Shown: positions 650 through 5,624 of the stretch, piece after piece
How the letters are laid out: each line of letters opens with the position of its first letter
How positions within the stretch are numbered: position 1 is the first letter of the stretch
Assembly (NCBI RefSeq): GCF_006345805.1
Contig: NW_021829967.1
Coordinates: 1 to 5,624 of the forward strand
Length of the DNA stretch: 5,624 nucleotides
DNA from: Octopus sinensis
Lineage: Eukaryota
Direction of reading: 5' to 3'
Notes under the pieces: model-generated
Seen by the model: only the letters and a program-made list of their open reading frames with translations
Databases searched by the model: none
Told to the model about the DNA's origin: nothing
Translations under genes and position numbers: made by a program

Positions 650-847
650 TCACATGACTTTCTAGAAACGACAGCCAAATATCCCTCAGATAACCCCTTA
701 CCAATCTATGAAAACAAAGCTCACGTTGAATAATGTAGTTCGGCGCTGCAGTATATTCAAAGTAAAAAGGAGGGAATGTCACCGCTGGAAAGCCTGCGAT
801 CACAGTTGTGCTGAATCAGGACTGACCTGGGGTTAAATAACAACAAT
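650..847 (+). mobile_element. AAC-tailed interspersed repeat (family C), copy 1
   Basis: Anchors shared with the other copies: CTAGAAA 662-668, TCCCTCA 682-688, ATAATGTAG 730-738 and GACCTGGGGTTAAA 824-837, followed by an AAC tail. It may extend upstream to ~590. Confidence 0.65.
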
Positions 848-894
848 ATGGACCAACAACATGACGAAGGGGACGGGACTTTACTTCGCTTCTT

Positions 895-1077
895 TATCTG
901 CTAGAAATAACAACCAAATCTCCCTCATATCTTATTGTCTTACAAAAAAATGAAAAGACGCAGACAATGAAATGCTAGTTAAACCTACATAAGGCAGGAT
1001 GGTCATAACTGGCATTCGTTGATCAAAGGTGGGCCTAGTCAGAGCTGACCCAGGGCTAAAATGACAACAACGACAAC
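895..1077 (+). mobile_element. Family C repeat, copy 2
   Basis: CTAGAAA 901-907, CTCCCTCA 920-927, GGATGGTCA, GACCCAGGGCTAAA 1047-1060, then an ACAACAACGACAAC tail. Confidence 0.65.
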
Positions 1078-1085
1078 ATGAATAA

Positions 1086-1172
1086 CATAATGTAGCTTTA
1101 GAAATGGTGATGGGTGGAATGATTTCGGTCATAGGTTTGCTGGCTTCGGGTTGGCCTAGGGTTAAAGAAGAC
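1086..1172 (+). mobile_element. Family C repeat, copy 3 (3' part only)
   Basis: ATAATGTAG 1087-1095, TGGAATG...GGTCATAGGTTTGCT and GGCCTAGGGTTAAA 1153-1166, collinear with the 3' halves of copies 1 and 2. Confidence 0.6.
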
Positions 1173-1283: not shown

Positions 1284-1299
1284 TAGTAGTAGTAGTAGT

Positions 1300-1344
<45 letters not shown>

Positions 1345-1462
1345 CTACTACTACTACTACTACTACTAATAGTAGTTTTTTATTGCTGCTGTTGTTACAG
1401 TATAGTCGTAGTAGTAGTAGTAATTGTTTTTATTTTTGTTGTTCTTGTTGCAGCGTAGTAGT

Positions 1463-1516
<54 letters not shown>
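1284..1516. repeat. (AGT)n trinucleotide microsatellite with internal (ACT)8 inversion
   Basis: AGT arrays at 1284-1343 and 1456-1516, an ACT array at 1344-1367, and degenerate TGT/AGT triplets between them. Confidence 0.97.
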
Positions 1517-1800
1517 CAAGTGTTTGGTGACCCTGCTCGTGTAACCCTATCCCCTACACAAATGTAAACAAATGCCTACTCCGTCTCTTCGCGGATCGAT
1601 CCCACGGGTTTCATTCTTATTTAGCACAACCCTTCAGGGACAACATACCCGTTTGTCTCCCGGGTGTCTTTGGCGGTGTTCATTCTATTGCACATATCCG
1701 AGCCATATAAGATCTTATCTCATTACTTTTGTAACATCAGTCACGGAAGTGGACGAAGATGCTTATGAACACTTCCTACCCCAGGGTGGGGACCACGTAT
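1517..1800 (-). pseudogene. Decayed 3' end of an RTE-type LINE ORF with (TAC)n tail
   Basis: Minus-strand translation gives VTDVTKVMR*DLIWLGYVQ (WLGYVQ at 1705-1688). After a 1-nt insertion at 1687 it continues RMNTAKDTRETNGYVVPEGLC*IRMKP. This resembles the post-RT LINE motif RRLRWLGHVxRM...W.PEG.R.RGRPK. The element runs directly into (TAC)n on the same strand, consistent with tandem-repeat tails of RTE elements. It has several stops and frameshifts. Confidence 0.45.
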
Positions 1801-1904: not shown

Positions 1905-2101
1905 ATAAAATAACTCTTTCTACTAAAATTTTGGAGGAAGGACCTAGTTAATTATATCGACCCCAGTATCCAACTGGTACTTAATTTATCGACCTTGAAA
2001 GAATGAAAGGCAAAGTCGACCTCGGCGAAATTTGAACTCAGAACATTAAGGTGAAAGACTGGCGCTAAGCACTTTTCTCGGAGTGCCAAAGTTTCTGCAA
2101 T
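1905..2101 (-). mobile_element. tRNA-derived SINE (family B)
   Basis: On the minus strand, B-box-like GAGTTCAAAT (2039-2030) is followed by CGCCGAGGTCGACTTTGCCTTTCATTCTTTCAAGGTCGATAAATTAAGTACCAG...CTGGGGTCGAT. This central motif resembles conserved SINE body domains (recall; exact domain name not verified). The motif is shared with the 3' half of family A. Confidence 0.7.
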
Positions 2102-3398: not shown

Positions 3399-3515
3399 AT
3401 ATGTATATATGTGTGTGTGTGTGTGTGTGTGTATGCGTGCTTGCGTATGCGCACACACACACACACACGCACACACTCTCTCTCTCACACACACAGACAC
3501 ACACACATGTACACG
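3399..3515. repeat. (TA)/(TG)n ... (CA)n/(CT)n compound microsatellite
   Basis: TG run ~3410-3432, CA run ~3452-3476, then CT and CA runs. Confidence 0.95.
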
Positions 3516-3759: not shown

Positions 3760-3950
3760 ACTTATTTCAGTCATTTGATTGTGACCATGCTGGAGCACCG
3801 CCTTCAGTCGAGTAAATCGACCCCAGGACTTATTCTTTGTAAGCCTAGCACTTATTTTATCGGTCTCTTTTGCCGAACCGCTAAGTTACGGGACGTAAAC
3901 ACACCAACATCGGTTGTCAAGCGATGTTGGGGGAACAAACACAGAAACAC

Positions 3951-3994
<44 letters not shown>

Positions 3995-4180
3995 ATATAT
4001 ATATACATACATATATAGATATATACGACGGGCTTCTTTCAGTTTCCGTCAACCAAATCCACTCACAAGGCTTTGGTCGGCCCGAGGCTATAGTAGAAGA
4101 CACTTGCCCAAGGTGCCACGCAGTGGACTGAACCGCGAACCATGTGGTTGGGAAGCAAGCTACTACCACACAGCCACTCC
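3760..4180 (-). mobile_element. tRNA-derived SINE (family A), near full length, with internal (TA)/(TG) microsatellite
   Basis: The minus strand starts GGAGTGGCTGTGTGG. It has A-box-like TGGCTGTGTGG (4176-4166) and B-box-like GGTTCAGTCC (4134-4125), then CCTTGGGCAAGTG (4113-4101), a typical post-tRNA SINE motif. The 5' part runs to ~4025, simple repeats occupy ~3940-4024, and the 3' part spans ~3935-3760. It resembles abundant octopus SINEs (recall) and aligns with the copy at 2270-2422. Confidence 0.8.
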
Positions 4181-4233: not shown

Positions 4234-4236
<3 letters not shown>

Positions 4237-4598
4237 TACACCCCCACCGCCCTGCCTGTCCTAGCCACATTCAGATGGCTAACGTCCCTTATGTTATGGA
4301 GCAGTTACTGTCTATATCTCGTTTAGAGAATTATTATTGCTGTCGAACGGATTTTCTACATCAGTAAATGTATTACTGTGAAAATCTTTATATATAGCCT
4401 GCACAGAGAGTCGTTCGTCGAGGGGCGGTGCCTGCCATACGTTGATAATAGGCAAACACCTTGAAACCTAGGTCCGTATGTGGCATCCGCTTCTTCGGGA
4501 ATGATCTCCCTTGCAGGCTAGAGGACGCCGGATGGCGTCAGCCCTCCTGGTGACGTTGATGATCGCCTGGGGCTAAATGCATCAGTAACACCCCCCAC
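4234..4598 (+). mobile_element. Putative retrozyme monomer or solo Penelope-like pseudo-LTR unit carrying the hammerhead
   Basis: Imperfect direct repeats CAGTACACCCCCAC (4234-4247) and CAGTAACACCCCCCAC (4583-4598) lie ~350 nt apart. They bound a non-microsatellite, hairpin-rich segment containing the hammerhead and abut (TA)n and (CA)n(TA)n tracts. The element class is inferred from the known association of type I hammerheads with retrozymes and Penelope-like elements. Confidence 0.45.
4436..4480 (+). ncRNA. Type I hammerhead ribozyme (U3-A8 core variant, palindromic helix III); predicted self-cleavage after GUC at 4474
   Basis: Helix I: CATACG 4436-4441 / CGTATG 4475-4480 (6 bp, perfect). 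Core 3-9: TTGATAA 4442-4448. Helix II: T4449, AGG 4450-4452, loop CAAACA 4453-4458, CCT 4459-4461, T4462. GAAA 4463-4466. Helix III: ACC 4466-4468 / GGT 4471-4473 with a 2-nt TA loop. C17 = 4474. Every element is in the register the hammerhead consensus requires, with no gaps. Helix I continues past an internal loop (4429-4432/4482-4485; 4421-4428/4487-4494). Confidence 0.88.
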
Positions 4599-4636
4599 AC
4601 ACACACACACACGTATATATATATATATATATATAA
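4597..4636. repeat. (CA)n(TA)n
   Basis: Directly visible. Confidence 0.95.
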
Positions 4637-4717: not shown

Positions 4718-4926
4718 TGTATATATATTTATATATGCATGTATATATATACATGTAGATGTAGGTACGTACATATATGTTTGTATGTATGCATATATTT
4801 TATTTATTACACTATTGTTTGACAGCGCCCTTGGCGTCGGGGTCGATTCGATTCGTTCGCTTCGTTCCGTTTCTTATTCTCCCAGTACTGTTTTATATAT
4901 ATATATAATATATATATACGCGTATA
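4718..4926. repeat. TA/TG-rich low-complexity tracts (4718-4800, 4895-4926)
   Basis: Directly visible; interrupted by a short GC-richer stretch. Confidence 0.8.
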
Positions 4927-5509: not shown

Positions 5510-5545
<36 letters not shown>

Positions 5546-5624
5546 CACACGTGTGTATCTCTGTGTGTATATATACACGCATAGAGATATAAGTATATAT
5601 GCACACATATATATGTGCACGCAC
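5510..5624. repeat. (TA)n/(CA)/(TG) compound microsatellite
   Basis: Directly visible. Confidence 0.95.

What the first reader, a model, noticed from the sequence alone, without database searches (positions are those of the whole stretch)
4421..4494. Complete type I hammerhead ribozyme in apparent octopus non-coding DNA
Seen in sequence: CATACG-TTGATAA-T-AGG-CAAACA-CCT-T-GAAA-CC-TA-GG-TC|CGTATG. Helix I (6 bp) closes exactly on position 3 and on the base after GUC. Helix II, GAAA, the A15.1-U16.1 pair and the NUH triplet are all in register. About 20 constrained positions make a chance match in 5.6 kb very unlikely (rough estimate, not computed). Established knowledge: type I hammerheads with an open helix I occur in animal retrozymes, satellites (newt, Schistosoma, cave cricket) and Penelope-like elements. 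Inference: this is a self-cleaving RNA of a mobile or circular-RNA family. I do not know whether it has been described in this host.
Basis: partly seen in the sequence, partly recalled or inferred. Interest (0 to 1): 0.92.

Follow-up and report, generated by a model that had tools for sequence, protein, structure and literature searches.

The report
Variant hammerhead ribozyme motif, single copy
The window holds one real-looking but non-canonical hammerhead self-cleaving RNA motif of the kind carried by small animal retroelements; this kind is already well known in animals, and I could not test whether this copy cuts.

Summary
The hammerhead proper spans 4436-4480 on the + strand, with the predicted cut between C4474 and C4475. 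It is the only such locus on either strand.

It is not a canonical core:
- U3-A8 replaces C3-G8.
- U.U replaces G10.1-C11.1.
- Helix III is 2 bp plus a tetraloop, inside the 8-nt palindrome ACCUAGGU.
- No Rfam hammerhead model matches, even at E<=10 on a 61-nt slice.

Chance is still unlikely. A relaxed descriptor that allows these deviations expects about 1e-4 hits per window.

Each deviation has a published natural precedent. The layout matches experimentally validated mussel and axolotl retrozyme hammerheads. Two copies are predicted to pair into the classic double hammerhead.

The motif caps a 126-nt hairpin that folds better as + strand RNA.

The window holds no second copy, no tandem array and no reverse-transcriptase remnant. 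No cephalopod genome was searchable, so copy number, covariation and cleavage remain untested.

Verdict: most likely a solitary retrozyme- or Penelope-derived type I hammerhead, of uncertain activity. It is a new member of a known kind, of modest interest.

The parts
4395..4520 (+). 126-nt imperfect hairpin with the hammerhead at its tip. The long stem has 41 pairs, including helix I.
   Evidence: The + strand RNA folds at -59.5 kcal/mol (z about -6 against mononucleotide shuffles) and the - strand at -51.6. Four G.U pairs exist only on the + strand.
4436..4441 (+). Helix I, 5' strand (CAUACG)
   Evidence: It forms 6 Watson-Crick pairs with 4475-4480.
4433..4435 (+). 5' side of the internal loop (UGC, opposite U4481), at the place of loop 1 in canonical type I hammerheads
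   Evidence: Folds. The published architecture has a 6-bp helix I followed by loop 1.
4442..4448 (+). Core positions 3-9, UUGAUAA (U3 and A8 instead of C3 and G8)
   Evidence: A U3-A8 covariation is reported in Schistosoma Cercyon Penelope-like elements.
4449..4462 (+). Helix II and loop 2: U.U (10.1/11.1), AGG/CCU, loop CAAACA
   Evidence: A U.U at the base of helix II occurs in axolotl HHR_Amex2. Loop 2 is CAAAAA in axolotl Ax330 and CAAATA in the laboratory WT hammerhead.
4463..4465 (+). G12 A13 A14
4466..4473 (+). Helix III: 8-nt palindrome ACCUAGGU (A15.1-U16.1, C-G, tetraloop CUAG). It can form an 8-bp intermolecular helix III in a dimer.
   Evidence: The format matches mussel ACGCGCGU and axolotl Ax353 ACACGUGU.
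4474..4475 (+). C17 and N1.1. The predicted scissile bond lies between 4474 and 4475, after GUC.
   Evidence: Register of the motif. Cleavage itself was not tested.
4475..4480 (+). Helix I, 3' strand (CGUAUG)
4248..4582 (+). Possible body of the inserted element (about 335 bp), lying between microsatellites. The boundaries are uncertain.
   Evidence: It is flanked by the gapped direct repeat CAGTA(A)CACCCCC(C)AC at 4234-4247 and 4583-4598. Repeats of similar quality are common in this window, so this is weak evidence. The 361-nt stretch folds with z=-3.3.

Best explanation
This is a genuine type I hammerhead ribozyme motif of the animal retroelement kind (non-LTR retrozyme or Penelope-like-element repeat). 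It lies on the + strand as a single genomic copy in repeat-rich non-coding DNA.

Proposed mechanism: when the + strand is transcribed, the RNA mostly sits in an inactive long hairpin. The catalytic fold has a 6-bp helix I, a U3-A8 core, a 4-position helix II with a CAAACA loop, and a 2-bp helix III with a tetraloop. It is weak as a monomer. It is stabilised when two copies pair through the palindrome ACCUAGGU into a double hammerhead. This could happen between tandem units of one transcript or between transcripts of different copies. Each core then cuts the other strand after GUC, between 4474 and 4475, leaving a 2',3'-cyclic phosphate and a 5'-OH.

In the parent family this would trim multimeric transcripts to unit length. 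The long helix I extension would hold the two ends together for ligation into a circle.

What is shown: the motif, its register, its statistical excess, the predicted folds and the match to published architectures. What is inferred: homology, membership of a mobile family, cleavage and the circular RNA.
For: - It is the only locus in the window that meets a hammerhead descriptor.
- About 1e-4 such loci are expected per window by chance.
- Nine metagenome matches to the bare core pattern all lack helices I and II, which shows what chance matches look like.
- The helix lengths match the published canonical metazoan type I architecture: helix I 6 bp, helix II 4 positions, helix III 1-2 bp with a small palindromic loop.
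- Every deviation has a natural precedent. U3-A8 occurs in Schistosoma Penelope-like elements. U.U at the helix II base, with a 2-bp helix III plus tetraloop, occurs in axolotl HHR_Amex2, which self-cleaves.
- Helix III is an 8-nt palindrome, as in the validated mussel and axolotl Ax353 retrozymes. Loop 2 (CAAACA) fits CAAANA, as seen in Ax330 and the laboratory WT hammerhead.
- The only two changes among the invariant core nucleotides fall on the two positions that pair with each other, and they keep the pair. This is an inference from the sequence.
- A covariance model built from four validated retrozyme hammerheads aligns 4436-4480 over its full length in exactly this register.
- The predicted minimum-energy fold of two copies is the double hammerhead, at -61.4 against 2 x -28.5 kcal/mol.
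- The long stem holds 4 G.U pairs and is 8 kcal/mol better on the + strand.
Against: - No Rfam hammerhead model matches, even at E<=10 on 61 nt.
- My own model scores only 12.2 bits, E=0.035, and a spurious helix-only hit ranks above it.
- Four positions that are near-invariant in most hammerheads deviate.
- The hammerhead fold of the monomer lies 5.5 kcal/mol above an alternative fold.
- The window holds no second copy, no tandem repeat of the unit and no reverse-transcriptase or endonuclease remnant.
- No homologous copy could be retrieved anywhere, so there is no covariation evidence.
- The loop-2 comparison was made after seeing the sequence.
- If the first-stage scan covered a large genome, the relaxed descriptor alone would give tens of chance hits.
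Confidence: 0.6

Rival explanations
1. It is a dead relic. The locus descends from a canonical hammerhead-bearing repeat, but this copy has lost activity through substitutions (C3U, G8A, G10.1U, C11.1U). It is now just an old solitary insertion.
For: - Four departures from the canonical core and helix II base, three of them transitions.
- All Rfam models miss it.
- It is a solitary copy with no partner for dimer formation.
- The monomer prefers another fold.
- Published minimal and variant hammerheads cleave poorly in vitro.
Against: - The two core changes are mutually compensating (U3-A8), which random decay rarely produces.
- The 41-bp stem and all three helices are intact, which argues against heavy decay.
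- Both variant features occur in natural families numbering thousands of copies, and HHR_Amex2 does cleave.
Confidence: 0.25
2. It is a chance look-alike: an unrelated hairpin whose 33-nt loop happens to resemble a relaxed hammerhead.
For: - The first-stage reader may have scanned many windows with a flexible mental descriptor.
- The relaxed descriptor would give tens of hits per 2.7-Gb genome (extrapolated).
- There is no Rfam hit.
- My own model gives only a marginal E-value.
Against: - The expectation is about 1e-4 per window.
- Features not in the descriptor also fit: the CAAANA loop 2, the full 8-nt palindrome, the internal loop exactly after 6 bp, and the double-hammerhead dimer fold.
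- Real chance matches to the core lack the helices.
Confidence: 0.07
3. It is a DNA-level foldback element (MITE-like, with TA flanks) or a hairpin RNA precursor. The selected feature is then the 126-nt inverted repeat, and the ribozyme resemblance is incidental to its function.
For: - The inverted repeat is near-perfect at its ends: TAGCCTGCA...TGCAGGCTA, with TA at both ends.
- Both strands fold significantly.
Against: - The hairpin tip matches a hammerhead far better than chance, even given a hairpin (the rate divided by the helix I term is about 4e-6 per position).
- The G.U pairs favour one RNA strand.
- No microRNA family matches 4395-4520.
- The TA ends are simply part of the palindrome.
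Confidence: 0.05

Closest known systems
Type I hammerheads of metazoan non-LTR retrozymes (mussel Mg353; axolotl Ax353 with HHR_Amex2; axolotl Ax330; coral Amil224) - PMC7229834
   Same: - Helix I is 6 bp, and helix II has 4 positions with a 5-6 nt loop.
- Helix III is a short palindrome (mussel ACGCGCGU, Ax353 ACACGUGU, here ACCUAGGU).
- U.U sits at the base of helix II, as in HHR_Amex2.
- Loop 2 is CAAANA, as in Ax330.
- The cleavage triplet is GUC.
- The possible unit of about 335-350 bp falls in the published size range of about 200-400 bp.
- The dimer-dependent design is shared.
   Different: - The core is U3-A8 instead of C3-G8.
- It is a single copy here, not a tandem array.
- Local GC content is 50-57% around the motif, against the <45-50% reported.
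- Circular RNA and cleavage are untested.
Minimal and variant hammerheads in the pseudo-LTRs of Penelope-like elements (Cervera & de la Pena 2014, PMC4209133)
   Same: - The U3-A8 core covariation is shared (Schistosoma Cercyon family).
[quoted passage not shown]
- Helix III is small and palindromic.
- Copies occur mostly as scattered single motifs.
- A dimer mode of action is expected.
- Penelope-like elements show an insertion bias for microsatellites.
   Different: - Those motifs have a long helix II (6-8 bp), a short helix I (4-5 bp) and often no helix III at all. Here helix II is short and helix I is 6 bp with a defined internal loop, which is the canonical layout.
- No reverse-transcriptase or GIY-YIG ORF lies in the window.
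Schistosoma mansoni Sm-alpha hammerhead, and the laboratory full-length hammerhead I believe derives from it (sequence CTGATGA-GTCC-CAAATA-GGAC-GAAAC in PMC6412130)
   Same: - The two are collinear segment by segment: 7-nt core, 4-position helix II, 6-nt loop 2 identical at 5 of 6 positions, then GAAAC.
- Relative to it, the three inner helix II pairs are exchanged in a compensatory way.
- The carrier is a small non-autonomous retroelement.
   Different: - Positions 3, 8, 10.1 and 11.1 differ.
- The similarity of loop 1 rests only on my memory of the Schistosoma sequence and was not tested.
Rfam Hammerhead_1 (RF00163), as annotated in cephalopods (235 loci in the giant squid genome, PMC6962438)
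   Same: Same ribozyme class and same animal group, if the window is cephalopod.
   Different: This locus is not detected by that model at any threshold tried.

Membership tests
Hammerhead ribozyme (type I) | Conserved core nucleotides C3 U4 G5 A6 N7 G8 A9 / G12 A13 A14 / A15.1-U16.1 / H17 | tested here: inconclusive
   U4, G5, A6, A9, G12, A13, A14, A15.1, U16.1 and C17 are present. C3-G8 is replaced by U3-A8, which keeps the pair and is a published natural covariation.
Hammerhead ribozyme (type I) | Three helices in register around the core, with helix I open-ended | tested here: met
   Helix I has 6 Watson-Crick pairs. Helix II has 3 pairs plus U.U. Helix III has 2 pairs plus a tetraloop. 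This is the only such locus in the window, and it aligns full-length to my covariance model.
Hammerhead ribozyme (type I) | Match to a curated covariance model (Rfam Hammerhead_1, _3, _II, HH9, HH10) | tested here: not met
   No match at gathering score, nor at E<=10 on the whole window, a 161-nt slice or a 61-nt slice.
Hammerhead ribozyme (type I) | Site-specific Mg2+-dependent self-cleavage after H17 | not testable with these tools
   This needs in vitro transcription of monomer and dimer constructs.
Hammerhead ribozyme (type I) | Core conservation and helix covariation among homologues | not testable with these tools
   No cephalopod genome is searchable here. Pattern scans and protein-database attempts found no relatives.
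Metazoan non-LTR retrozyme | Short tandem repeats (about 170-400 bp), each carrying a type I hammerhead | tested here: not met
   The window holds one motif and one copy of the unit. A solitary monomer or a truncated array cannot be excluded. The possible unit size of about 335-350 bp fits.
Metazoan non-LTR retrozyme | Expression as linear and circular unit-length RNA | not testable with these tools
   No transcriptome data are available.
Penelope-like element pseudo-LTR | Hammerhead lies in a repeat flanking an RT plus GIY-YIG endonuclease ORF | tested here: not met
   No long ORF and no Pfam domain on any of 10 frames scanned. Published data say most such motifs occur as single, probably truncated copies, so this does not exclude that origin.

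The most novel reading that the evidence does not exclude
This locus represents a cephalopod hammerhead subfamily that combines a U3-A8 core with a U10.1.U11.1 helix II base in an otherwise canonical type I scaffold. Such a subfamily would be invisible to all Rfam hammerhead models and therefore missing from genome annotations. It would be active as dimers and would produce abundant small circular RNAs from retrozyme-like repeats in octopus tissues.
Probability: 0.2. Interest if true: 0.5.

Novelty: new member of a known kind. Interest (0 to 1): 0.3.

Why it matters
If active, this locus would add octopus to the hosts of hammerhead-bearing retroelements. It would also show that a double-variant core (U3-A8 plus U.U at 10.1/11.1) can sit in a canonical type I scaffold.

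The practical point is that standard Rfam-based annotation misses this motif. Counts of hammerheads in cephalopod and other invertebrate genomes may therefore be underestimates.

It would not change what is understood about ribozymes or retrozymes.

Tried and rejected
- **Rfam scans.** At gathering score and at E<=10 on 5624, 161 and 61 nt, no hammerhead match appeared. The only matches were microsatellite artefacts to mir-297, mir-466 and mir-3149.
- **Search for homologous copies.** A family-specific pattern found 0 hits in metagenome and viral contigs.
- **Generic core pattern.** A U3-A8 plus CAAANA pattern gave 9 metagenome hits (8 distinct sequences), none with helices. These served only as a chance control.
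- **Protein-database searches.** A 53-aa frame across the element and a SINE-derived ORF were used to try to reach source or related contigs. Neither found a candidate.
- **Exact look-up of window ORFs.** Two ORFs were looked up and neither is on record.
- **Literature full-text search.** Strings from the motif gave only unrelated hits, and SINE strings gave none.
- **tRNA scan.** No tRNA was found.
- **Second copy or tandem unit in the window.** None was found.
- **Penelope reverse-transcriptase or endonuclease remnants.** None was found.
- **Target-site duplication.** A candidate exists at 4234/4583, but the background rate of such repeats is high, so it is not used as evidence.
- **MITE reading.** Considered, and kept only as a minor rival.
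- **Covariance model from four validated hammerheads.** The register was confirmed, but the score is marginal and the model is over-fitted on helix I sequence.

Full report
**1. The observation**

- Helix I: CATACG (4436-4441) pairs with CGTATG (4475-4480).
- Core: TTGATAA (4442-4448).
- Helix II and loop 2: T, AGG, CAAACA, CCT, T (4449-4462).
- Then GAA (4463-4465), ACCTAGGT (4466-4473) and C4474.

I wrote an independent type I hammerhead descriptor. It allows C3-G8 or U3-A8, 0-1 extra nucleotide on each side of helix II, helix II of 3 bp or more, and a short helix III. It finds this locus and no other on either strand. An even looser scan for core plus helix II plus GAA also finds only this locus.

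- The two 'spacer' T's occupy positions 10.1 and 11.1, so helix II starts with a U.U mismatch.
- A 2-nt loop is not feasible. Helix III is therefore A15.1-U16.1 and C-G closed by the tetraloop CUAG.
- The core is not canonical, because U3 and A8 replace C3 and G8.

**2. Is it more than chance?**

I ran the relaxed descriptor on 60 Mb of first-order Markov sequence, trained on the whole window, on the local region and on the non-repetitive part. It gave no hit with helix I of 6 bp or more, and four hits with 4 bp or more.

Scaling by the pairing probability gives about 1e-8 per nucleotide. That is about 1e-4 for this window on both strands. The same rate implies tens of chance hits in a 2.7-Gb genome, so the number of windows the first stage read does matter.

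Several features outside the descriptor lower the chance reading further.
- Loop 2 (CAAACA) fits the CAAANA loop of axolotl Ax330 (CAAAAA) and of the laboratory full-length hammerhead (CAAATA).
- Helix III is a complete 8-nt palindrome.
- An internal loop follows helix I after exactly 6 bp.

As an empirical control, I scanned the JGI metagenome collection for the bare core pattern TTGATAA-N4-CAAANA-N4-GAAAC-N2-6-GTC. It occurs 9 times (8 distinct sequences), and none of these has a helix I or a fully paired helix II.

**3. Negative model evidence**

No Rfam family matches 4395-4520 at gathering score. None matches at E<=10 on the whole window, on a 161-nt slice or on a 61-nt slice.

I built a covariance model from four experimentally validated retrozyme hammerheads. 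These are coral Amil224, mussel Mg353, and axolotl Ax353 and Ax330, taken from the supplement of PMC7229834.
- The model aligns 4436-4480 over its full length in exactly the predicted register.
- The score is only 12.2 bits, E=0.035.
- A spurious helix-I-only match ranks just above it.

Model-based support is therefore marginal. The case rests on the descriptor statistics and the architectural match.

**4. Comparison with published hammerheads**

Cervera and de la Pena (PMC4209133) describe canonical metazoan type I hammerheads as follows. Helix I is 6 bp and helix II is 4 bp, and the two interact through their loops. Helix III is 1-2 bp capped by a small palindromic loop. This design works as a dimer. 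The candidate has exactly these dimensions.

Each of its deviations has a natural precedent.
- U3-A8 is a reported covariation, with about 1,300 hits in Schistosoma, associated with Cercyon Penelope-like elements.
- About 60,000 axolotl HHR_Amex2 motifs have a U.U mismatch at the base of helix II and a 2-bp helix III with a tetraloop. They self-cleave weakly as monomers and much better as dimers.

The helix III palindromes of mussel (ACGCGCGU) and Ax353 (ACACGUGU) have the same format as ACCUAGGU here.

Among the invariant core nucleotides, the only two changes fall on the two positions that pair with each other, and they preserve the pair. Random decay would rarely do that. This last point is my inference.

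**5. Structure predictions**

As a monomer, the RNA prefers an alternative fold in which UAGG pairs with CCUA. The hammerhead fold is 5.5 kcal/mol less stable.

Two copies together have the double hammerhead as their minimum-energy structure. It has an 8-bp intermolecular helix III and totals -61.4 against -57.0 kcal/mol for two monomers.

The motif caps a 126-nt hairpin (4395-4520) with 41 pairs. Four of these are G.U pairs, which would be A.C mismatches on the other strand. The + strand RNA folds at -59.5 and the - strand at -51.6 kcal/mol. This mildly favours an RNA-level structure on the hammerhead strand.

In a unit-length RNA, this long helix I extension would bring the two ends together. 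That arrangement is the one expected for ligation into a circle, which is an inference from the retrozyme model.

**6. Context**

The window is microsatellite-rich non-coding DNA.
- No ORF has a Pfam domain.
- There is no tRNA.
- There is no second copy of the 4236-4600 stretch.

The motif lies in a stretch of about 360 bp between a (TA)n tract and a (CA)n(TA)n tract. A gapped direct repeat, CAGTA(A)CACCCCC(C)AC, flanks a body of about 335 bp. Repeats of that quality are common in this window, so I do not count it as a target-site duplication.

I recognise octopus-type SINE-like sequence from memory only. No database or paper search here could confirm the host.

**7. What it most likely is**

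The best explanation (confidence about 0.6) is a genuine type I hammerhead of the animal retrozyme or Penelope-derived kind. It carries a variant core and a dimer-dependent design, and it is present here as a solitary copy.

If it cleaves, the cut falls between C4474 and C4475. Whether this copy is active is open.

The main rival (about 0.25) is an inactive relic of such an element. Chance (about 0.07) and a foldback element or hairpin RNA with an incidental resemblance (about 0.05) are minor rivals.

**8. Novelty**

Type I hammerheads are abundant in animal genomes. Mussel has thousands of motifs and axolotl about 126,000. The giant squid genome paper already lists 235 Rfam Hammerhead_1 loci.

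This is therefore a new member of a known kind. The modest twist is that a U3-A8 core and a U.U helix II base occur together in a canonical scaffold, and that Rfam-based annotation misses it.

The decisive tests could not be run here. They are copy number and covariation in cephalopod genomes, cleavage of monomer and dimer transcripts, and RNA ends or circular junctions at 4474/4475.

Noticed in passing
window 662-1169: A degenerate tandem repeat of about 240 bp, roughly 2.3 units. 662-846 aligns with 901-1070 at 63% identity (E=1e-8), and 786-840 aligns with 1115-1169 at 69%. TRF misses it. It holds no hammerhead-like core. Its unit ends (GACCTGGGGTTAAAT) share a 13-nt match with 4566-4578 of the hammerhead element, but this is not significant.
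   Followed up: partly
window ~3790-4175 (- strand) and ~1940-2100 (- strand): These stretches look to me, from memory only, like the abundant tRNA-derived SINE of octopus genomes. This is the sole basis for 'octopus'. ARAGORN finds no tRNA. Protein-database and literature string searches found nothing. The two stretches share only a 36-nt match at 72% identity.
   Followed up: partly
window 3405-3478, 128-200, 4723-4793, 5529-5614: Sub-threshold Rfam matches to mir-297, mir-466 and mir-3149 all fall on (TG)n, (CA)n or (TA)n microsatellites. They sit far below the gathering scores and are artefacts.
   Followed up: yes
window 4553-4563: ACGTTGATGAT repeats ACGTTGATAAT (4439-4449) 114 nt downstream. 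It contains a second 'UUGAUGA' half-core with no helix II, GAAA or helix I partner, so it is probably chance.
   Followed up: partly
window 4521-4560: A GC-rich region directly 3' of the long hairpin forms a small stem-loop, GACGCC-GGAT-GGCGTC, in every fold. Its role, if any, is unknown.
   Followed up: no
window 1285-1520: (GTA)n runs switch to (CTA)n and back. They form 50-55-nt inverted repeats of 75-84% complementarity (I5-I8). This is a microsatellite-derived hairpin that also attracts weak miRNA-model matches.
   Followed up: no
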